Positions 46,231 through 59,080 of a stretch of 64,000 nucleotides of DNA are shown in pieces. The first letter of the stretch is position 1. The number at the start of each line of letters is the position of its first letter. Below the pieces are notes generated by a model. It made no database searches, was not told where the DNA came from, and saw only the letters and a program-made list of their open reading frames with translations. Source of the DNA: Dimorphilus gyrociliatus (Eukaryota; Animalia; Annelida); the NCBI GenBank assembly GCA_904063045.1, contig CAJFCJ010000013.1, positions 850,156-914,155 of the forward strand, in the 5' to 3' direction. A program made the translations under genes and the position numbers.

Positions 46231-49200
46231 ATGAGAGATACTGAAAATTTATGGGATGGAGAGTCAAGAATGTATGGTATTGAAAATCCTGCATTTAATA
46301 CGTCGTTACGCCTTGCTAAATCAGAAGTAAATTAATCTTTTTTCAAAGTACATTTATACACTTTTAAAAACTGTAATTAATTATTTCAGAGTACCAATAG
46401 CACTGCTAGTTTAGCCTCTTCATCAAGTGAGCAGGAACAATTAGTTTTCAAGTACGTACAGCGGAGTGAGGATTCTGTGAAAAAAGGAGATTGGCAAAAT
46501 GCCGTTCGTCATTATTCTAGAGCAATATCTCTCGATCCGCGGAATCATATTTTATATAGTAACCGTTCAGCAGCATATCTACATTTAGGTAACGGGAAAG
46601 CTGCTTTAGAAGACGCTTTAACTGCTCGTAACCTTCAACCTTGTTGGGCTAAAGCCCATGCTAGAGAAGCAGCTGCTTTAGAAAAATTAGGAAGAACTTT
46701 AGATGCTGTTGCAGCTCATGCAGATGCCGTTTCCTTGGATCCATCTTCAAATAACCTTCTGGATTCTTTAATTTGCTATATTCAAAACTGCGAGTTGGTG
46801 AAAAAGTTTATTGATTTAGATTTTCGTCAATTAGACGAAATCGGATTATCTCAAAGCGCCAGTGTTGTATTGGCTTTGATTGGTCAACGATTGGTATCAT
46901 GCAAACAATACCCATATGCTATAAGGATCCTAGAGGCTGCTTTACGTGTCAAGACTTCGTCTCTCAGGTTACGATCGTCAATATTTTCAACTTTGGCTAG
47001 AGCTCATTACAGTGTCGGAGAGTTGGAAAAGGCTATTGTTTGTATGCAGCAAGATTGCGCTGCATCCGCTGCATTGCATCATATTGATGGTCAATTTAGG
47101 GCCTATTCAAACTTAGGGGTGGCATTTTACAAAAAGGGACAATATTCAGACGCCATAGATGCTTACAAAAACGTTCTTTCGCTGGCAACTCGTGTGAAAC
47201 AACATCGAATGGCTTTGCACGCTTTATCCAATTTGGGATATTTGTATACGGCCAAAATGGAATTTGCTGATGCGATAGCGGCTCATAGACAAGCCATATT
47301 AGTTGCTAGAACAATTAAAGATAGGCACCAAGAGGCGAAGGAAATGGGGAATGTCGGAACCGTTTTCCTTGTAATTGGTGATTGCAGGGCCGCTTTGGCT
47401 TGCCATTCGCATCACCTTTTGGCTGCAAGAAACTTAAAAGATAAATTTGAAGAAGCACGAGCATATTCTAATATGGGAGCCGCTCGTCACCGTCAAAAAC
47501 GCTATGAAGATGCACTTTCACTTTATACTGATGCACTAAATATTGCTCAAGACCTAGAAAATATACCACTCCAATTAAAAGCGTATGACGGCCTGGGTTT
47601 GGCCGCCCGTTGTTCGGCACAATTAGCAGCAGCCCAAAAATATCACGAGAAACAACTGGATTTAGCCCTTAACAGCCGACAAAAATCAGCTGAGGCAAGA
47701 GCCTGTTCGAACTTAGGCATTCTGTTCTCTTTACTAAATGAGCATGAGGCTGCTCTTAAATTGCACTCATCTCATGCTAGAATAGCGCTAAAGTTGGGAG
47801 ATAAAGGGTCTGAATGTCAAGCTATGTTCAACATGGCAAATTGCCTCTATAATCTAGGTCAACTTGAAAAGGCTACGAGTCTGTACGAAAAAGTTTTAAC
47901 AACATCTCGCAAACTTCACGATAAACATATTGAAAGCAATTGCCATTGTCACATTGCCCAAAGCTACGAAAGTTTACGAATGTATCAACGAGCCGCCGAA
48001 CACTTTGAACTGTCAATTAAACTGTGTTGTGAATTGAAAGATTGCGTTGGTGAAGCCAAATCGGCTAATCTTCTTGCCCGATTACATTCCTCAACCGGTC
48101 ATCTAACTGCCTGCCCTCCACTCTATGAACGCTGTGTTGCCCTCTGGCAACAGGCCAATGAACCCATAGCTGAGGCGAATGCCTGGAAAACATTGGCCGA
48201 ATGCCATACAGCAATGTGTGATTTTGAAAAGGCCTCGGAATATTTAGGTAAAGCTTTGTCTCTTGCTAGAGCTTCCAGTGACATATCAACAGTTTGTGGT
48301 GTGTATTGTTCATTATCGGCTTTAAAACGGAATGAAGGTAAACTGGATGAGAGTCTGGAATATGCTGAAAAAGCTTTCGAGATCGCAAAATCCAGTGTCA
48401 ATCTTCGTTGTTTGTATATTGTTCAAAAGGCTTTGGGTGAGAGTTTCTCCGCTAGAGAGGACTATGATTCAGCAGTGAGAATTTTTCATCAGCTTGTTAA
48501 CACAACTAAATCTGTTGGTGATAAAAAATTAGAGTGCGAAGCTTTGTCTCTTTTGGGTGCTAACTATAAAAACATGATACAAATTGATAAATCATTGAAT
48601 ATTCATAAGGAAGAATTGAGATTAGCTCAGGAATTGAATGATTTAAAATTTATATGTACAGCCAATTCCAGATTAGGAGATGTCCTTTTAACATTAGATG
48701 AATTTCCTAAAGCTTTGACTTATTTTGAAGAGCAGGCTGAAAAAGCAAGAATTATAGGCGATTTCCATTCGGAAGCTACAGCCTACGGAAATATGGCCAT
48801 CTGCAGAATGAATATGGGTCAAATAACCGAAACAATTAACCTTTTGGAAGATCAGATAAATACCTTAGACAAATTACCGTGTGCTCATATGATACCGACC
48901 ATTTTATTGGAGAATGCTCAGGCGTATTTGAAATTAGGCGATTGCTACGAGAATTTGGATGATTTCGACGAAGCCATTAAATCTTATGAAAAAAATCTAG
49001 CTTTGGCTATAAATGCAAAGTCTGCTCTTCACCAAAGTAATGCCTATAGAAAGCTTGGAAACGCTCATAGAGCAGTTGGAAACTTACACCAAGCTTTAGT
49101 GTGCTTTGAGAAACGTTTGGTGTTAGCTCACGAGTATGACGATGTGCGAACAAAAGGGACGGCTTGTGGTGAATTGGGCTGCCTTCATTCACTTCTCGGT

Positions 49201-52200
49201 AATTTAGATCAAGCAGTTTCATATTTGGAACAACAGCTAAGAATCGCTAAAAGTGAAAACGATTTAAATTTAGAAGCTGATGCAGCTTGCGGTTTAGGTG
49301 GTGTTTTCCAGCAAATGGGAGTTTACGAAAAGGCGTTGGAGTATCATGAACTTGACTTATCTCTGGCTAAAATTATCGAGAATTCGGCTGCTCAATGCCG
49401 CGCATTTGGTAATCTAGGATTAGCCAACGAATCTCTTGGTCAGCTAGAAAAGGCTTTTGAGCATCAGCAAAAGCATTTGAACTGTGCTAGTGCAATGAAT
49501 GATGGTGTTGCTCAAACTCTCGCCTTATCCAGTCTTGGTAGAATTCAATACGCTTTAGGAAAACACGATTCTGCTATTGATTATTTAAGAAAAGGTTTAG
49601 ATATTGCTCAGGAATTGGGAAGGACAGCTGATCAGGCCAAAATTCATCATCGTCTCGGCCTTGCTCTGTTCGCCAGAGGTACTCTTACCGATGCCCTACA
49701 CCACTTAAGTACTGCTACCGAATTACTAGACGATATCAGAAGAGATTCCCAATTAGCAAATGAATATCGATTATCATTGTTCGATTTACAAACAGCGGCA
49801 CTTCATGCTCAATTACGAGTTCTGGTTGCTCTAAATAGAATTGACGATGCTCTCGTATTGGCTGAGCAAGCTAGGACCAGAGCTCTTATTGAATTAATGT
49901 TAGAGAGGCAAGGAAATATTTCGGACATGGTTCCAATTATCGATGTAGATATAGTTAGAAATGCCGTTGTCGAACACGGAAGGCATATTGTTTATATGGC
50001 ATTAGCTGCGGGATTCTTACACGTGTGGCTGCTTTCACCAAAGAACGGCAGCGTATTGAATTTTTTTCAAATTGACTTAAATGAATTAGAAAGTACCGAC
50101 AATGACGAAAGTCAAAGTATGAGGAGTGCAGGAGCCGCCTCTCTTTTGGATCAATATATTAGCCAAGCAAGGAATTCGCTTGGGGTCGATTCTCATATAC
50201 CGCTATTTTCCTCAGCAAGATCATCTATGAGATTAGGAGGAAGAGATATCGGTAGCGATGATGATGACGATGACGATAAGCCATCAGACTTTCTCCGATT
50301 ATTGCGACGCAGTCATATATCTAACAAGAGCGTATACAGTCGTATATCAACAAGCTCCAAAAGATCATTTACCAGTCTTTTGTCCATCAATTCCAATAAT
50401 TCTTGCCCCTTCGTTTCTCTCTATAATTTATTCTTTTCAAAACTTGACGATTCTCTGAAAAAGGCCGAAGAAGAATGTCATTTAACACTCGTTTTACAGG
50501 CCGATTTATACTTAGTTCCATGGCCCCTGTTGAGACCTGGTCCAGAATCTCCATATTTATTTGAAAGATTTTCTCTTTTGATCGCACCGTCATTACGGGC
50601 TCTTACAAGAAATACTGGTTTAGCTCCATCTTGCGGCGGTTTAGTGATAGGTCCACCTTCACCCGTACCACCTCCGTGGTATATGATGACAAGAGAAGCT
50701 GATGATGAAGCTAGAATGGTATCAGATATAATGGGATGGAGATGTATGTCTGCGGGCAATGCGACAAAACAGGCAGTAATAAAAGCTATAACTGGAGCCG
50801 AAGTTTTACATTTTGTTGTCCATGTCTCTTGGCGTTTATCGGCCATTATTTTGGCTGTTGACTCTCGCATGCAGCTAAACGAGGATTCCATTTTACCATC
50901 TTCAATTTTAACAGCCAGCGATTTATTAGATATTAAATTGAGGGCTAAATTAGTAGTTCTATCAACAGCTTACTCGCAAGATAGAGGTTCCACAATAAGT
51001 GCCGATGGACTCTTGGCTGTTACTAGAGCGTTTTTGGCGGCAGGAGCTAGTACAGTTTTGGTGTCTCTATGGCCGGTACCTGGTATTGCTAGTAGGGGAA
51101 TGATGAAAGCACTATACGGTGAATTAATTCAAGGAATTCCAATAACTCAGGCTCTTTCTCAATCGCAAAAAATACTAAAACATTCCCCTGGTACAAGTCA
51201 CGCTTCGAATTGGGCGGGATGGATTATTGTTGGCGTAGACAACCCCACACTATCGTCACATACGGCTTTACTTGCCGATGCACTTGCATGTATGCTTAAA
51301 TCTGCTGTTTCAACTAACACTCCAAAAAGGGAGGCAATGAGAGTAGTTCTTCATTTGGTGGAAAAATCTTTACAAAGAATGAATCATGGTGAAAAACGCG
51401 CAATGTATACGCCAGTAAGTACACTTCAACAAAGAATTGGTCAAGAAGGAGGTGGATGGAAAGAACTTTTATCTTCTGTTGGATTCAGACTTGAAATGCA
51501 ACAGCAAGCTGTTTATTTTTTTCCGTCAGTTGATCCCGGACAGCGATTGGCTAGATGTTCAGCTGCTCTTCAGGCCTTATTGGCTCTCCCGGCTCTCACT
51601 TTAGTCGCTTTGTCAAAGCTACTCGATAATCCAGTGGCCGCTCGGGAATTGCACCAGCTGCTTCGAAGTATTGATCGTCCCTCTTCGTCAACCCTCTCGT
51701 TAAAATTGCACGTCCATATATGGAGAGCAGAGGGATGTCATGAATTACTTGCTTCTTTAGGGTTTGATCTAATTGATGTGAAAGGAGAAGAAGTGTCTGT
51801 TAGAGCAAGTAGACAAGCCACCAGAAGGATGCTTCAATTAACAGTTCATGCATTAGCTGCTCTTTTTGACACTGCTCCAAGCCATCTATCATTAGACTCT
51901 TCAAGTAGCATAGATTCCCCTCCTTCATCTCCCTCCTCTCCTTTATCAGCTTTACGACGTCCAAAAGTATCGAATATACCCGATTCAACAGATAGTGAAC
52001 AAGAAGAAATGCACTCAAAAGTTAATTCAGGCAGGCTGCCATCATTTGTTACCTCATCCCCGAATCATAAGCCAAATAGCGGTCCGTTTATGCCATTAAA
52101 TACCAGCGGGACGTCCGGATTCCAGCCGATTAACGCACACATAAAAACAGATGAAGAAGACGAATCGAATCTCTTTTCCTATCCTAAATATTTAGACTTT

Positions 52201-52305
52201 CACTCGAAACTTCGACCATCAGTTGACAATTATACAGACACAAATTTCAACGTCGAAAGTGAACTGAAAAATAACGAATCTTACGATGGAGCAACTTTTT
52301 GCTGA
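46231..52305 (+). CDS. TTC28: Tetratricopeptide repeat protein 28 (TPR array plus degenerate CHAT domain), ~2003 aa
   Basis: Exons 46231-46326 and 46390-52305. Long RAYSNLG-type TPR array; CHAT region (LYLVPWPLL, ERFSL.IAPSL, EVLHF, AFLAAGA..VLVSLWPV, WAGW); C-terminal LHLVEKSLQR and GGWKELL..VGFRLE. Confidence 0.95.
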
Positions 52306-52543: not shown

Positions 52544-52999
52544 ATGGATCTCAACAAAGACGATCAACCGGGTGTTTCAAAAGAATCTAGCCCGAATTCC
52601 GAACCGAATAGCTCTTTAAATGGTAAATCGGAAACTAAGAAGATCGTTGCATCTAAAAAGACTGATAAATTACCCCCGCTACTCAAATCCAGATTAAAAA
52701 ATACGGTGGAGGAGGTTGCTAACCTATTATCGCCCATTAACATTGTCGACGATAATCGAATAACAATCAGGAATTTATCACATCGTGTGAATCAAGATCA
52801 TTTAAACGAAATTTTTGGAAAGTATGGGCCAATCGCAAATATTGACTTAAAGGAAGAATTTGCTGTGATAGAATACGAGACATTTGAAAATTCTCAAGAA
52901 GCAATAAAAAAGATGGATCAGGGATTTATCGACAGTAAACAGATTCTAGTTGAACCGTATTCCAGCGAAAAACAAGAAGAAATTGTTTTAAATCTATAG
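52544..52999 (+). CDS. Single-RRM protein, RNPS1-like RRM without RS domain, intronless
   Basis: ITIRNLSHRVNQDHLNEIFGKYG, FAVIEYE, AIKKMDQGFIDSKQILVE resemble the RNPS1 RRM pattern; real ATG in A-rich context. Confidence 0.7.
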   Translation: MDLNKDDQPGVSKESSPNSEPNSSLNGKSETKKIVASKKTDKLPPLLKSRLKNTVEEVANLLSPINIVDDNRITIRNLSHRVNQDHLNEIFGKYGPIANIDLKEEFAVIEYETFENSQEAIKKMDQGFIDSKQILVEPYSSEKQEEIVLNL

Positions 53000-53177: not shown

Positions 53178-56100
53178 CTACTGTCCGATAAGAAAGGCTT
53201 CTTTTTTGACTGGGTAAAGCGCAGTTTCTGTTTTCACGAACCAACATTTTACGTTTCCTCGATAAGTCAAAAGGGCTTCAAAGGGTCTATTATTCATAAC
53301 AACGACACCTACCCTTTGGCCACTTTGTACAGGTTCGTGAACATTTTGATAATTTCTTTTTACGTGTCCTAGAATTCCTCCTACGTGTTTGGTTAACCTT
53401 CGGTCAGGGATTCCGACATCTAAATGCTTTACTCCAAAGGCATGACTGCCTAGTTTAATTTCAACTTCTAAATCATCAGGATATTCGCCAGTTTGTATTG
53501 TTATTGCTTTTGTAGCTTGATCATATACCATTAGGATATCGCCAATTGTCAAGGCTCCTTCTTCTCCGTTAAATAACATAGACGTCTGTCTTACTCCATT
53601 AGTATCAACAACCACAGAGTTGCTAGGACTTTTCACGATCACTTTATGGAAGTAAAAGTCATCTAATAAAGTAGCCGAAACAGACCATCCTGCAGCAGTA
53701 TCATTCAGTAAAATGTAACTGTCTCCAGATTGTCCAAATAGATCAAAGCAAAGGGGCTTCAATGCAGTTGTATCTGGCCAAACAATAATATGAGGATCAT
53801 CTGTAATTTCTGATGATGTACACTTGCAGGGCATGCAGGTCATGTCATTAGTTGGATTATAATCGTTATACGATATTACATTTTCCGAGCCATCAAATTC
53901 AGATACAGCTTTAACGGAAACACATATCATCAAGTCTTTCCTTTTACAATCTTCTTGAGTCAGAGTCACCGTATAACGGGTTATAGAAACCCCTCTTGTT
54001 GTGCCGGCAAATAAGGTGGCTCCTTCCAGAGTTGCTTCATCAGCTTTTGGTTTACTGTTTGATTCAAGTGGGAAAACATATAATCGGTAGAAGAAGTTCT
54101 TCGAAGGAGGATTTTTTGGATATCCGATATCCTGATCACCAATATTCGCAATATCGGCAACAACCTCGACAATACTACCATCAGGTACAATTTCATAAGT
54201 TGTTTTTCCAGTCTCCTTTACTCTTAAATTGCTTATCATTACGTCCACTTTAGAAGTTTCGCATTCTATATCCATACACGCTAAATCATTAGCAGTATTT
54301 GGATCAATATAAGCAATAAAAGTTTCCGAATTTTTCAATACTCTAGCGGCTTTAGTGCAAACGCATATTTTATCACCACAATACGACTTGGAAAATTTAA
54401 TTGTTCGCTTAAGGCTAGCAGTTCTAGTTTGACCAACGTTCAAGGTAATATCGGATTCACTAGATGATACTTTGGGCCAAGCATTTCCAATACTTCCATC
54501 CAATCCTAACAATCCAACATGAAAAGCGAAATTGTCGGAAAGAGGCGATTGCGGATACGGTATGTTATCTCTTCCAAGATTCTTCAAATTTACTATTAAA
54601 TTCAAAGTAACGGAATCACCATTATTTGCATTGATGAAATATTTTGTTTCTTTAGAGTGCATTCTCAATGCAGATGTTTCAACATCAGCATAAACATCCT
54701 TAGAATCATCATATTTACATTCGATATCAATACAAGCCAAATCATTTTTCGTATTCGGATCAATATAAGAGACAAATGTCTCTGAATTTTGTAGTTGTCT
54801 CGCCGGTTTGGTACATAAACAAATTGTGTCTCCGCAAAACGACTTAGAGAATTTTACTTTTCGCAATAATGCAACTGTCCTCGTTTGATCCACGTCCAAC
54901 TGCATATCAGAGTCTGGTGAATCAACTCTGGGCCATGAATTTCCAATAGTACCGTCAAAGCCCAAAATTCCAAGACGAAAGACAAAATTTTCAGTTAGAG
55001 GAGATGTAGGGAAATCAATATCGTCTGGACCCAAATTTCTTAAGTTTGCTCTTAAGTTAAAGTTAATAAATTGTCCATTTTCAGGATTAACAATTTCAAA
55101 GCGTTGATTTCCAGATTCCATTCTCAAATTCGAAGTTTCTACATCCGACTGAACGTCAATAATTGGATCAAGCTCACAGGAAATATCCATACATGCCAAA
55201 TCATTCTCTGTGTTCGGATCAACGTACGCAGCTCGATTTTTACCATCAATAAACAGTTTGGTCGATTTAGTACAAAGGCAGATTTTATCACCGCAAAATG
55301 ATTTCGAAAATTTTACTTTTCTAGTCATCGTCACAGTTCTTGATTCACCGCGATCCAAGCTTATATCAGTATCGGATGAAGAAACTTTTGGCCACGAGTT
55401 ACCAACTGTTCCATCGAGTCCAAAAATTCCAACTCTAAATACAAAGTTGTCAGAGAATGGCGAAGTTGGAGAGTCAATGTCATCAGGTCCCAAATTTCTG
55501 AGTCTGGCTCTTAATTCGATAGTAATTGTATCTCCATTTTCGGCAGACATTCCATAAACAATTTCATTATTCATTGTTCTCAATTGCGATGTTTCAACAT
55601 CAGCATTTGTCAAAGGATTTGGTTGTGGACAAACGATATTCATGCAAGCCAGATCGTTGGCAGTATTCGGATCGATATAAGCGATATGAGTTTTACTGTT
55701 TTTCAAGATTCGGGCAGCTTTGTTGCAGAAACAAATTTTATCGCCGCATAGGCTCTTTGAAAATTTGATCTTTCGCGACATTCTTATAACTCTGCGTTGT
55801 CCGTCATTCAATGATATATCTGTATCAGAAGAAGACACCTTTGGCCAACTATTACCAATTGAGCCATCGGCGCCAAGAATTCCGACTCTGAAAACAAAGT
55901 TATCATTCAATGGAGACTGTGGAGAGTTGATGTCGTCTGGTCCAAGATTATCAAGTTCAGATCTAAATTCAAGAGTGAGCGTTTCGCCGTTGTTGGCTGT
56001 AATCTCGTAGTCATTTCGATTGCTACCAGTTCGTAAGTAATTTACTCTAACATCAGCCATTGGGGTTGAGTCACTATCGCATTCGATTAACATACAAGCC

Positions 56101-59080
56101 AAATCGTTTCCTGTGTTTGGATCTACGTAGGCAACTTCATTCTTTCCATTAGAGAAGACTTTCTTAGGTTTGACGCACAAACAAATTCTATCTCCGCACA
56201 TTGATTTAGAGAATTTTATTTTCCTTGTCATGTATACGGTTCGCGATTGGCCGTGATTGAGACTGATGTCGGTATCAGCAGAACTGGCCTTGGGCCAAGT
56301 GTTTCCAATTTGTCCGTCGAAACCCAAAATTCCAACAAGGAAAACAAAGTTTTCCGAAAAAGGACTTTGAGGAGAGTCAATATCACTGTCTCCAAGATTT
56401 CGTAATCTTGCCTTAAGGTTAAGAGTAACGCTATCACCGTTATCAGCATCAATTTTGTAGACATTGTCATCATTTTTAGTTCGAAGATTAGAAACTTCAA
56501 CGTCGGAAACCCCAACAAGATTTTCACCATCACAAACAAGCTTCATACAGGCCAAGTTATTTGCAGTATTGGGATCTATATAAGCTACATAACTTTTTGA
56601 ATTTTTAAACATTCTCGTTGCTTTTACGCAAAGACATATTTGATCGCCGCAAAGTGATTTAGAAAATTTAATTTTTCTAGTCATCTTGACTTCTCTCATT
56701 TGTTGATTATTAAGCGTTATGTCTTTCTCAGACGAAGACGCTTCAGGCCAAACATTGGCTGATGTTCCATCAAGACCAAGTAGACCAACACGAAAAGAAA
56801 AATTTTCAGTCAACGGAGATTTGGGATATCCAATATCTTTATCGCCGAGATTCTTAAGTCTGGCTTTCAATTCAAGTGTAACTGTTTCACCATTATTGGC
56901 GTTAACTTGATATTCAAAATCACTACTGAAAGTTCTCAGGTCGACAGCTTCAACATCTGACAAACCATTATCGCAGACAATATTCATACAAACTGCATCG
57001 TTGCTCGTATTTGGATCGTTATATGCAATGTAGGTTTTACCATTTCTAAATACTCTTGAACTCTTGACACAGAGACAGATTTTGTCGCCACATAACGATT
57101 TCGAGAATTTAATTTTTCTTGACATGTAGAAAGTTTTGTGTTGACCTTCGTTCAGACTGGCTTTGGTGTTTGACGACACTTTGGGCCAGTTGCCTGCCGA
57201 TGATCCGTCTAAACCTACTATACCAACTTGCAAGACGAAATTATCGGTCAGAGGAGACTGTGGTGAACCAATATCGCCTTGCCCCAAATTTTTCAATCTT
57301 GCTTTCAAATCAAGTGAAACTATTTCGCCATTATTGGCATTTATCACATATTCATTATCATCGTTGAATCTCTGCAAGTTAGATGCCATTACATCAGTAA
57401 GCCCGTCGGTTTTCGAGCACTTAATTTTCATGCAGGCCAAATTGTTACTGGTGTCTGGATCCGTATATGCAATATAAGTCATTCCATTAACAAATTTTCT
57501 CATGGCTTTAACGCACAAACAGATTGTATCACCACATAACGACTTGGAGAAAGTAATATCACGTTTGAAGGAAACTGTCTTGGATTGGCCATTGTTTAGA
57601 GATATATCGGTATCTGAAGAGAGTGCTTCAGGCCAAACATTTCCAATAGTACCATCAAGGCCAAGTATTCCAACGCGAAATACAAAATTTTCCGATAATG
57701 GATTTGTCGGAGAAGATACATCACCATCTCCCAGATTTGTGAGTGTTGCTTTCCAGTTAAGGGTAACTTTATCACCATTATCGGCGCTTATTTCGTATTC
57801 ATTTTCATTATCTACAGTTCTTAAGTTTGAAGCTTTAACATCTGAATCAGTTTGAATATTATCAGCTTCGCATACGATATCCATACAATCCAAATCATTG
57901 TTTGTATTGAGATCAGTATAAGCCAAATGTGTTTTTCCACTCGAAAAGTGACGTTCAGCTTTGACGCAAGCACAAACTTTTGAGTTACATAACGATTTCT
58001 TAAATGTAATATGACGATAAAGAGAAATAGTCTTTGTTTGTTTGTTATATAAGGTTGTACTACTATCACCGGAAGATGCCTTGGGCCATGTATTTCCGAT
58101 TGATCCATCTAATTTCAAAAGTCCAAGTCTAATATCGAAATTATGGTTTAGTGGAGCTTTTGGAGAATCAATATTTTCTGTTCCATGATTTTTAAGGTTG
58201 ACTTTAAATTCCAATTTAATATTTTGACCTTCATCAGCATTTATATTATATTTAACACCATCAGTCTTTGTCCTCAGATTTGACACTTGTACATCAGATA
58301 CACCTGAGGGTGATAAAATACTAGTTAAGAGATATTTCTTATAATAATAAGATAAGTTTTACCTGTAGCAGGAGCAGAATTGCAAGTTACTTTAATACAA
58401 GCTAAATCATTCTCCGTGTTTTGATCCTTGTAAGCGATATAAGTTTTATCTTTAAAAACTCTTGTAGCTTTCACGCATAGACAGAGAAAATCATCGCAAA
58501 GAGATTTTTTGTACATGACTCGTCTTTTAAGCTCAATAGTCTTAGATTCTCCATTTTTTAGTGTTATATCGCTGTCGGACGACGCCGCTTCCGGCCATGT
58601 ATTACCAACTGAACCGTCCACCTTTAGAAACTGTTAATGGTAACATACAGATTAATAATATTAAATATAAACTTTTAACCAATAGATAACTTACTCCGGC
58701 AAGAAGTTCAAAATTATCAGTAAGCGGCAAAGATGGTGTCAATATATCGTCATTTCCTAAATTCTTTAAATCTGCCTTAAGTTCAAATGTCAGGTATTCA
58801 CCTTCGTTCGCATTTACGTTGTAAGTATTCTTTTCATCAGACGTTCTCAAGTTCGAAACCTTCACGTCTGCTATTGTATCTTTTAAGGGGAAAAAATAAA
58901 AAGATACATTATTAATAAACAATTCGAATAAAGTCAAAAAAAAGAGAAAGAGAGAGAATAGAATGGAAATATTCATGCAGAATAAGAACGTATTAGAAAC
59001 AAAAAGTATATATATTTACCAGCTAACAATCCCGATAAGAAGCTTAAAATTAAAGCCAAAAACAGCCCTCGCAGTGCCAT
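53178..59080 (-). CDS. Secreted 1879-aa protein: signal peptide, 11 tandem ~150-aa Cys-containing repeats, DPH site and ITIH-C-like terminal domain
   Basis: Exons 59080-59020 (MALRGLFLALILSFLSGLLA), 58879-58695, 58630-58363, 58303-53178 sum to 5640 nt in frame. Repeat consensus sDVexsNLRT..y.i.A.NG..v...A.L.NLG..DI..P..P...NF.F.vG..g.DG..gn.WP.....L..G....R.i.FsKs.CgdxiCxC........Y.DPnt.NdlaCm.i.C. Confidence 0.9.

What the first reader, a model, noticed from the sequence alone, without database searches (positions are those of the whole stretch)
53690..53805. D-P-H site predicts autocatalytic cleavage and covalent attachment of the repeat rod
DDPHIIVWPDTTALKPLCFDLFGQSGDSYILLNDTAAGWSV aligns by eye with the ITIH heavy-chain junction (DPHFII...CF.....G..L.L..D...G..V); DPH is at 53798-53790. 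It is established that ITIH chains are cleaved at this Asp-Pro bond and the new C-terminal Asp is esterified to chondroitin sulfate and then hyaluronan; GDPH sites in mucins and FCGBP also self-cleave. Inference: the 11-repeat fragment could be covalently tethered to glycans or proteins, an invertebrate ITIH-like cross-linking system.
Basis: partly seen in the sequence, partly recalled or inferred. Interest (0 to 1): 0.8.

Follow-up and report, generated by a model that had tools for sequence, protein, structure and literature searches.

The report
Self-cleaving ITIH-type cap on a worm rod protein
A highly expressed secreted protein of the tiny marine worm Dimorphilus gyrociliatus ends in a diverged copy of the domain that makes vertebrate inter-alpha-inhibitor heavy chains cut themselves at Asp-Pro. 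The same cap sits on about 100 other worm proteins, so self-cleavage is likely, but covalent tethering remains unproven.

Summary
DDPHIIVW is encoded on the minus strand, with DPH at 53798-53790. It lies in a transcribed, spliced gene for an 1879-aa secreted protein: signal peptide, 11 repeats of about 150 aa, then a 205-aa C-terminal domain.

The by-eye ITIH match is real homology.
- A profile of worm paralogues hits proteins that pass Pfam ITI_HC_C, at E about 1e-14 library-wide.
- hhalign against the worm's own VWA+ITI_HC_C gene gives 96.8% probability.
- The AlphaFold model (pLDDT 87) matches ITIH2 models at TM 0.81 and solved VWD domains at Z up to 12.
- Alignments to the self-cleaved FCGBP and RGMB chains begin at the model's Pro of DPH.

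DPH is kept in 65 of 71 paralogous copies and in all 4 orthologues. By composition, 0.05 DPH per protein is expected.

Self-cleavage at Asp1674|Pro1675 is therefore likely (about 0.65), despite Asp or Asn replacing the usual Gly. Covalent esterification of the rod is only an inference (about 0.25). Chondroitin-synthesis genes exist, but no Link domain was found, so the hyaluronan step has no support.

First-stage notes on other pieces of this genome flagged similar GDPH-ITIH caps. This is a new variant of a known kind.

The parts
59020..59080 (-). Exon 1: start codon and signal peptide (MALRGLFLALILSFLSGLLA...)
   Evidence: A spliced RNA contig joins 59020 to 58879. Translation. The same N-terminus is found in the 1879-aa collection protein P0002.
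58695..58879 (-). Exon 2: first half of repeat 1
   Evidence: Joints at 58879/59020 and 58630/58695 appear in two runs. The intron has GT..AG ends on the minus strand.
58363..58630 (-). Exon 3: second half of repeat 1
   Evidence: The joint skips 59 nt. With the +2 shift the intron is 58304-58362, with GT..AG ends.
53178..58303 (-). Exon 4: repeats 2-11, the C-terminal domain and the stop codon (53178-53180)
   Evidence: An open frame of 1702+ codons. One RNA contig covers it without gaps.
53796..58286 (-). Ten repeats of about 150 aa with 5 Cys each, the last one diverged. They are CARDB-like by language-model features only. This is the 'rod' that would end in Asp1674 after cleavage.
   Evidence: Repeat parsing and Cys counts. 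Atlas feature hits to CARDB clusters score 0.83-0.90, a lead only. Pfam finds nothing.
53790..53798 (-). Asp-Pro-His motif. The predicted scissile bond lies between the Asp codon (53798-53796) and the Pro codon (53795-53793).
   Evidence: Conserved in orthologues and in 65/71 paralogues. Aligns with DPH of bona fide ITI_HC_C proteins.
53181..53795 (-). C-terminal fragment Pro1675-Gln1879 (205 aa, 22.7 kDa): a diverged ITIH-C-terminal / VWD-fold beta-sandwich
   Evidence: AF2 model with pLDDT 87.2. TM 0.81 to an ITIH2 model. Z 12.0 to VWD domains. hhalign probability 96.8% to the worm's ITI_HC_C. Library-wide profile hits to ITI_HC_C proteins.
53748..53750 (-). Cys33 of the domain alignment (the LCFD motif), invariant
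   Evidence: Invariant in 28/28 paralogues and in three bona fide ITI_HC_C proteins. Codon checked.
53244..53246 (-). Cys201 of the domain alignment (the CW motif), invariant. It is the presumed disulfide partner of Cys33.
   Evidence: The pairing is inferred, because model coordinates could not be inspected.

Best explanation
The gene encodes an 1879-aa secreted protein: a signal peptide, eleven cysteine-bearing repeats of about 150 aa, and a 205-aa C-terminal domain. That domain is a diverged member of the ITIH heavy-chain C-terminal (ITI_HC_C) family, itself a VWD-type beta-sandwich.

The DPH at the domain's first residues is the family's conserved Asp-Pro self-cleavage motif. The most likely course is as follows:
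1. Once the domain has folded in the secretory pathway, the side chain of Asp1674 attacks its own backbone carbonyl.
2. The Asp1674-Pro1675 bond breaks through a cyclic anhydride.
3. The 182-kDa repeat rod is left ending in Asp1674.
4. The 23-kDa domain starts at PHIIVW and is not held by a conserved bridging disulfide, so it can leave, as the ITIH propeptide does.

Shown here: the gene model and its transcription, the homology, the fold, the position and conservation of the motif, and the cysteine pattern. Inferred: cleavage itself and release of the domain. Open: whether the anhydride is simply hydrolysed or is captured by a glycan or protein hydroxyl or amine.

The same C-terminal cassette ends about 100 other secreted proteins of this worm, so it works as a general C-terminal processing module in this lineage.
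For: Gene and expression:
- A spliced 5.8-kb RNA contig covers all four exons, and a second run shows the same joints.
- The collection holds an 1879-aa protein, P0002, at 99% identity.

Homology:
- BLASTP of the window domain against the worm's own VWA+ITI_HC_C gene (L033, Pfam 49 bits) gives E 6e-6, with DPH and both Cys aligned.
- hhalign of the paralogue profile against L033 gives probability 96.8%, E 2e-10, over 194 columns.
- The profile search of 1.84 billion proteins hits P0151 and P0152 at E about 1e-14. Both pass Pfam ITI_HC_C, at 44.8 and 64.5 bits.
- ITI_HC_C is the only Pfam family that recurs among the paralogues, and it tops the Atlas feature hits.

Fold:
- The AF2 model has pLDDT 87 and pTM 0.83.
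- The best Atlas shape match is ITIH2: TM 0.81, 206 aa, 2.4 A.
- The top 19 PDB representatives are all VWD domains, Z 12.0-8.0. The best unrelated chain scores 6.7.
- Alignments to the cleaved chains FCGBP D10 (from P4081) and RGMB (from residue 169) start at model residue 18, the Pro of DPH (D4080 cleavage in PMC10880436).

Motif:
- DPH is invariant in 4 orthologues and present in 65/71 paralogues.
- D17, P18 and H19 are among the 15 best-conserved of 229 columns.

Release type:
- Only two Cys are conserved, both downstream of DPH, as in ITIH.
- Most paralogues have no Cys in the 15 residues upstream.
- The domain ends within 15 residues of the C-terminus in 35 of the first 40 library hits.
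- PMC11670116 states that ITIH lacks the bridging Cys and is released.

Gly is not obligatory. The worm's own ITIH has SDPHF, and PMC10880436 lists GDPH for human ITIH3, ITIH5 and ITIH6 only.
Against: - No cleavage product was observed. RNA data cannot show it.
- The residue before the scissile Asp is Asp (Asn in one orthologue), not Gly. Simulations of FCGBP suggest that a cis Gly-Asp bond helps the attack (PMC10880436).
- Recombinant MUC2 D4 has GDPH yet stayed uncleaved (PMC10880436), so the motif alone does not guarantee cutting.
- The window protein itself gets no Pfam ITI_HC_C or VWD hit, even at E<=1.
- The strand before DPH is poorly modelled: pLDDT is below 50 for residues 1-15.
- A Cys lies 8 residues upstream. 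The Cys33-Cys201 pairing is inferred and was not measured.
- The C-terminal domain is the best-conserved part of the protein among orthologues (82-93% identity against 66-81% for the rest). That could mean it has a lasting function rather than being discarded.
Confidence: 0.6

Rival explanations
1. After the Asp-Pro cut, the Asp1674 anhydride is captured by a hydroxyl of chondroitin or another glycan, or by a protein amine. The 11-repeat rod then becomes covalently tethered to matrix, as ITIH heavy chains are esterified to chondroitin sulfate. This is a subset of the best explanation, giving one outcome of the cut.
For: - The domain is homologous to the one domain for which such coupling is established. 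PMC8267560 cites Enghild 1991, Morelle 1994 and Kaczmarczyk 2002: the Asp is ester-linked to C6 of GalNAc.
- The cysteine pattern and the terminal position are of the ITIH type.
- The genome holds at least 7 loci of the chondroitin synthase/GalNAc-transferase family CHGN, so an acceptor glycan is plausible.
- The same idea was proposed for the sponge aggregation-factor wreath domain (PMC11670116).
- The cassette caps many different secreted cargoes, as a general anchoring device would.
Against: - Nothing here bears on the fate of the anhydride.
- In FCGBP all GDPH sites are cut, yet the Asp was found hydrolysed and no partner was attached (PMC8267560).
- No Link/Xlink domain was found in the genome, so the transfer to hyaluronan has no support. 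That search rang in no control genome either, so this is weak evidence.
- No bikunin-like carrier was sought.
Confidence: 0.25
2. VWD/FCGBP-type outcome. The bond is cut, but the two fragments stay together, through the first beta-strand remaining in the sandwich or through a disulfide from the Cys 8 residues upstream. Cleavage then only stabilises the terminal domain, which acts as a lasting binding or assembly head on the rod.
For: - The fold matches VWD domains at Z 12, including the cleaved FCGBP D10.
- Cleavage stabilises FCGBP D10 (PMC10880436).
- The C-terminal domain is the most conserved part among orthologues.
- A Cys lies 8 residues before the scissile Asp in all orthologues.
Against: - That upstream Cys is the fifth Cys of the repeat unit and occurs at the end of every repeat, whether or not the domain follows.
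- The domain's only two Cys are conserved in paralogues that have no upstream Cys, and in ITIH. This leaves no free partner.
- The domain is terminal and is not followed by C8/TIL modules.
Confidence: 0.2
3. No cleavage. In this orthologue group the Gly-to-Asp/Asn change has inactivated the site, and the domain is kept as an uncut C-terminal binding or folding module.
For: - The orthologues have DDPH or NDPH, whereas the closest paralogues and 60/71 family copies have GDPH.
- The Gly-Asp cis bond is implicated in catalysis in FCGBP, and even GDPH can stay uncut (PMC10880436).
Against: - DPH and the following IIVWPDT are invariant across orthologues down to 68% overall identity.
- The worm's canonical ITIH also lacks Gly, with SDPHF.
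- PMC10880436 lists GDPH for human ITIH3, ITIH5 and ITIH6 only. From background knowledge not verified here, HC1 and HC2 are nonetheless cleaved and coupled.
- Six family copies that did lose the motif show what decay looks like: KDPY, DKYH, GDSH, GDPD, QDPF.
Confidence: 0.3

Closest known systems
[quoted passage not shown]
   Same: - A homologous domain at the extreme C-terminus.
- DPH at the domain's start.
- The same two conserved Cys (xCFDx and CW), and the conserved H..HLD and GG(I/L)LG motifs.
- The best structural match, TM 0.81.
- No conserved Cys to bridge the cut.
   Different: - There are no VIT or VWA domains. The cargo is eleven CARDB-like repeats.
- The sequence is too diverged to reach Pfam's threshold.
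- DDPH is present instead of GDPH/xDPHF.
- It belongs to an expansion of about 100 copies specific to dinophilid worms. All 16 named proteins among the 20 hits looked up are D. gyrociliatus.
- Coupling to chondroitin sulfate is not shown.
GDPH-containing VWD domains (FCGBP, MUC2 D4, MUC5AC, BMPER, SUSD2) and the RGM C-terminal domain
   Same: - The same beta-sandwich fold, Z 8-12.
- The Asp-Pro-His motif lies at the turn that opens the domain.
- Alignments to the cleaved FCGBP and RGMB chains start at the Pro.
   Different: - There is no Pfam VWD hit.
- There are no C8/TIL/E modules.
- There is no conserved disulfide tying the first strand to the sandwich.
- The domain is always terminal, not internal.
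Sponge aggregation-factor wreath domain (MAFp3/p4), PMC11670116
   Same: - An invertebrate, lineage-restricted derivative of the VWD/ITIH fold.
- It has an Asp-Pro hairpin and lacks the bridging Cys.
- Cleavage and glycan binding through the terminal Asp have been proposed for it, but not shown.
   Different: It belongs to a different phylum and architecture. No sequence comparison was made here.

Membership tests
ITI_HC_C (PF06668), ITIH C-terminal domain | Scores above Pfam's gathering threshold (27 bits) | tested here: not met
   The window protein gets no hit, even at E<=1. Of 28 paralogues, 4 hit below threshold, best E 0.0076. P0001 scores 15 bits.
ITI_HC_C (PF06668), ITIH C-terminal domain | Statistically significant sequence or profile similarity to proteins that do pass the threshold | tested here: met
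   The paralogue profile hits P0151 (VWA+ITI_HC_C) and P0152 (ITI_HC_C, 64.5 bits) at E about 1e-14 over 1.84 billion proteins. hhalign against L033 gives 96.8%, E 2e-10. BLASTP gives E 6e-6.
ITI_HC_C (PF06668), ITIH C-terminal domain | Same fold as the ITIH C-terminal beta-sandwich | tested here: met
   Atlas shape search: ITIH2 cluster TM 0.81 over 206 aa at 2.4 A, and ITIH3-like 0.70. VWD proteins score 0.56-0.61. Both sides are predicted models.
ITI_HC_C (PF06668), ITIH C-terminal domain | Asp-Pro-His(-Phe/Ile) at the heavy chain / propeptide junction, followed by xCFDx; CW near the end; domain at the C-terminus | tested here: met
   D17, P18, H19, C33, D35, C201 and W202 are invariant in the alignment with L033, P0151 and P0152. 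The domain runs to the stop codon.
ITIH heavy chain (the whole protein family) | VIT and VWA domains N-terminal to the cleavage site | tested here: not met
   Pfam finds no VIT or VWA in the 1702-aa ORF. The N-terminal part is made of CARDB-like repeats. The worm has a separate VWA+ITI_HC_C gene.
ITIH heavy chain (the whole protein family) | Cleavage at Asp-Pro and ester bond of the new C-terminal Asp to chondroitin sulfate | not testable with these tools
   This needs protein chemistry. The only finding here is that CHGN-family genes exist in the genome.
VWD domain (PF00094) with GDPH autocleavage | Pfam VWD match | tested here: not met
   No hit.
VWD domain (PF00094) with GDPH autocleavage | VWD beta-sandwich fold with the motif at the turn after the first strand | tested here: met
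   VIA-align Z 12.0-8.0 to 19 VWD or RGM entries, with the next unrelated chain at 6.7. The cleaved chains 8qci_B (from 4081) and 7ne0_D (from 169) align from model residue 18, the Pro. Foldseek gives E 5e-4, probability 1.0. The strand before DPH is itself poorly modelled.
VWD domain (PF00094) with GDPH autocleavage | Disulfide from the first strand to the body that holds the fragments together after the cut | tested here: inconclusive
   The family has no conserved upstream Cys, and only two Cys in the domain. The window protein has a repeat-derived Cys at -8.
VWD domain (PF00094) with GDPH autocleavage | Gly before the scissile Asp (GDPH) | tested here: not met
   DDPH in the window and two orthologues, NDPH in one orthologue. 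GDPH in 60/71 paralogues.

The most novel reading that the evidence does not exclude
Dinophilid worms have turned the ITIH self-cleaving C-terminal domain into a general covalent-anchoring cassette. About 100 different secreted proteins (CARDB-like rods, lectin-like repeat proteins, small Ig-like proteins) would each be cut at (G/D)D|PH and ester-linked through the new C-terminal Asp to chondroitin or other glycans. This would build a covalently cross-linked extracellular material. ITIH-type protein-glycan coupling would then be an ancient, portable chemistry and not a peculiarity of vertebrate heavy chains.
Probability: 0.2. Interest if true: 0.75.

Novelty: new variant of a known kind. Interest (0 to 1): 0.55.

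Why it matters
Protein-glycan ester coupling through a self-generated C-terminal Asp is established essentially for one vertebrate family, the ITIH heavy chains on bikunin chondroitin sulfate. The function of GDPH cleavage in VWD proteins is still unclear (PMC10880436).

This worm offers a natural experiment. The same cassette is detached from VIT/VWA, fused to about 100 unrelated secreted cargoes, and carries natural variants at the position before the scissile Asp (G, D, N, S) as well as decayed copies. The gene is abundantly covered in RNA-derived contigs, and the domain is small and well modelled.

This makes three questions directly testable:
- whether the domain alone is enough for cleavage;
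- whether Gly is needed;
- whether coupling to glycans occurs outside vertebrates.

If only cleavage occurs, the result is a modest one: a new, lineage-expanded branch of a known self-processing domain.

Tried and rejected
- **Pfam on the ORF and on the C-terminal part** gave only sub-threshold noise (RNR-II_ins_dom, NusG_II, DUF7490). I rejected these.
- **PDB sequence searches**, single sequence and profile, gave chance hits to HIV protease, SHBG and 14-3-3. I rejected these too. No ITI_HC_C structure is reachable by sequence.
- **Single-sequence AlphaFold** failed, with pLDDT 35. It was replaced by the run using the paralogue alignment.
- **The word search with the 237-aa tail** found only one paralogue, because of its length window.
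- **Paper searches** for DPHFII and DPHF found nothing useful. The statement that human HC1 and HC2 are cleaved without a Gly therefore rests on background knowledge, plus the remark in PMC10880436 that ITIH3, ITIH5 and ITIH6 have GDPH.
- **The Xlink search** found nothing, but it also rang in no control genome, so absence is weakly supported.
Its CARDB likeness is a lead only.
- **No hand-joined spliced protein** was sent to any search tool. I used exon references and the collection's own full-length protein P0002 instead.
- Only the best 150 of the 307 library hits were visible, so the share of true ITIHs in the tail is unknown.
Full report
**The sequence**

They lie in a 1702-codon open frame, 53178-58286.

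Two public runs give the gene model. One is an RNA library with a single 5783-nt contig across the whole locus. Both show three spliced-out introns with GT..AG ends. The exons are 59080-59020, 58879-58695, 58630-58363 and 58303-53178. The coding sequence is 5637 nt, or 1879 aa.

The public collection holds an 1879-aa protein, P0002, that is 99% identical and begins with the signal peptide MALRGLFLALILSFLSGLLA joined to exon 2. None of the contig's differences from the window falls in the DPH codons. The organism is the annelid Dimorphilus gyrociliatus.

I did not hand a self-joined spliced protein to any search tool. I used exon references and P0002 instead.

**Anatomy**

After the signal peptide come eleven repeats of about 150 aa, each with five Cys; the last repeat is diverged. 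Pfam does not recognise them. Language-model features point to CARDB-type Ig-like domains at scores of 0.83-0.90, which is only a lead.

The protein ends with a 205-aa domain that starts at the Pro of DPH. This is the only DPH in the protein, where composition predicts 0.054.

**Is the ITIH resemblance real?**

Pfam gives no ITI_HC_C or VWD hit for this protein, and PDB sequence searches give nothing. Several independent tests nevertheless agree.

- *A large paralogous family.* The genome holds at least 107 six-frame matches to the domain. I extracted 71 copies. DPH is present in 65 of them: 60 GDPH, 3 DDPH and 2 SDPH. Six show decayed motifs. In a 28-member alignment, D17, P18 and H19 are among the 15 best-conserved of 229 columns, together with two invariant Cys, C33 and C201.
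- *Pfam on the paralogues.* ITI_HC_C is the only Pfam family that recurs among them, below threshold. It also tops the Atlas feature hits.
- *The worm's own ITIH-like gene.* The worm has one canonical gene with VWA plus ITI_HC_C at 49 bits and the motif SDPHF. The paralogue profile matches its C-terminal domain by hhalign at 96.8% probability and E 2e-10 over 194 columns. The window domain matches it by BLASTP at E 6e-6, with DPH and both Cys aligned.
- *The library-wide search.* The profile search of 1.84 billion representatives found only 307 proteins at E<=0.001. Among them, P0151 (VWA + ITI_HC_C) and P0152 (ITI_HC_C, 64.5 bits) score E about 1e-14. In a joint alignment D-P-H, C33, D35, G41, H135, G157, C201 and W202 are invariant.

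**Fold**

With the paralogue alignment, AlphaFold gives pLDDT 87.2 and pTM 0.83; the single-sequence run had failed.

- The nearest Atlas models are ITIH2 (TM 0.81, 206 aa, 2.4 A) and ITIH3-like (0.70). VWD proteins follow at 0.56-0.61.
- Against 48,161 solved chains, the top 19 entries are all VWD-type domains at Z 12.0-8.0: MUC2, MUC5B, VWF, FCGBP, Cypridina luciferase, vitellogenin and RGMB. The next unrelated chain scores 6.7. Foldseek agrees.
- The two entries whose chains begin at a self-cleaved Pro are FCGBP D10 chain B, from P4081 (D4080|P4081 in PMC10880436), and RGMB, from residue 169. Both align from model residue 18, which is the Pro of DPH. The motif therefore sits at the structurally equivalent site.
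- The strand before DPH is poorly modelled, with pLDDT below 50 for residues 1-15.

**Which kind of GDPH domain is it?**

The literature distinguishes two types. In VWD and RGM domains a disulfide keeps the fragments together. ITIH lacks that Cys, so its C-terminal domain is released and the new Asp can bind glycans (PMC10880436, PMC11670116, PMC8267560).

This domain looks like the ITIH type:
- It has only the two ITIH-type Cys, both downstream of the cut.
- Most paralogues have no Cys in the 15 residues upstream.
- The Cys 8 residues upstream in this protein is the fifth Cys of the repeat unit and occurs at the end of every repeat.
- The domain ends within 15 residues of the C-terminus in 35 of the first 40 library hits.
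- Its N-terminal cargoes are diverse and carry signal peptides, for example P0012 and the lectin-like repeat protein P0084.

These points favour a released propeptide, but the Cys33-Cys201 pairing is inferred.

**Orthologues**

Three further full-length proteins, at 82, 69 and 68% identity, come from metatranscriptomes and from a related genome with the same RRM and TTC28-like neighbours. All keep DPHIIVWPDT. The preceding residue is D, N, D and D.

The C-terminal domain is the best-conserved part of the protein: 82-93% identity against 66-81% for the rest.

**Mechanism and odds**

Homology and the position of the motif are shown. Cleavage at Asp1674|Pro1675 is inferred, at about 0.65.

- For: the motif is conserved, and the worm's own ITIH lacks the Gly.
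- Against: Asp or Asn stands where Gly is usual; a proposed role of the cis Gly-Asp bond in FCGBP; and MUC2 D4, which kept GDPH uncut in a recombinant system (PMC10880436).

Covalent capture of the Asp anhydride is a further inference, at about 0.25.

- For: the ITIH kinship, and at least seven loci of the chondroitin synthase family in the genome.
- Against: FCGBP, where every site is cut but the Asp is hydrolysed (PMC8267560).

The hyaluronan step has no support. No Link domain was found, though that search had no positive control.

**Verdict**

The chemistry is plausible but untested.

The thing itself is a new variant of a known kind: an ITIH-type self-cleavage cassette detached from VIT/VWA and expanded to about 100 copies. 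All 16 named proteins among the 20 hits I looked up are D. gyrociliatus. First-stage notes on other pieces of this genome flagged similar cassettes.

Noticed in passing
window 53796-58879 (-): Each of the ~150-aa repeats has exactly five Cys (SLC, IC, LC, AC, xC). That is an odd number, so one Cys per repeat is either free or bonded between repeats or molecules. In D. gyrociliatus the last repeat has CMPCKC where the orthologues have CMxLKC.
   Followed up: partly
window 53796-58286 (-): Eight repeats carry a conserved Y(I/V)DPNT motif, and there is a ninth Asp-Pro (LDPII). These are acid-labile Asp-Pro bonds that could mimic specific cleavage in any biochemical test.
   Followed up: partly
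G000 contigs C11:1194790-1217000, C6:1320024-1353098, C5:2525966-2603370, C14:376419-386411: Many of the 107 matches to the C-terminal domain lie in tandem clusters. Several copies carry in-frame stops, so they are likely pseudogenes, and many lie on short unplaced contigs.
   Followed up: no
L033 (G000:C9:526158-529628): This is the worm's single canonical ITIH-like gene, with VWA exons followed by an ITI_HC_C exon that starts AAESDPHFLL. A globin-like ORF lies just downstream.
   Followed up: partly
P0077 (DgyrCDS14435, 833 aa): This annotated protein combines FLYWCH and MULE transposase domains with a fragment of the GDPH domain. It is probably a transposon insertion or a merged gene model.
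   Followed up: no
window 46477-52305 (+) and 52544-52999 (+); L077: The neighbours are a TTC28-like TPR/CHAT protein and a small RRM protein. They keep the same order next to the orthologue in a related genome (Logan contig, L077).
   Followed up: partly
run X1 (coral metatranscriptome), JGI samples 3300027264 / 3300022595 / 3300022597: Full-length transcripts of this gene and of 69%-identical orthologues turn up in coral or aquarium-type metatranscriptomes. Dinophilid worms are therefore present in those samples.
   Followed up: no
P0084 (DgyrCDS3694, 1145 aa): This secreted protein has about eight lectin-like Cys-rich repeats (weak LCCL hit) and ends in GQGDPHMRHY plus the same C-terminal domain. 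It is a second long 'rod + cap' architecture.
   Followed up: partly
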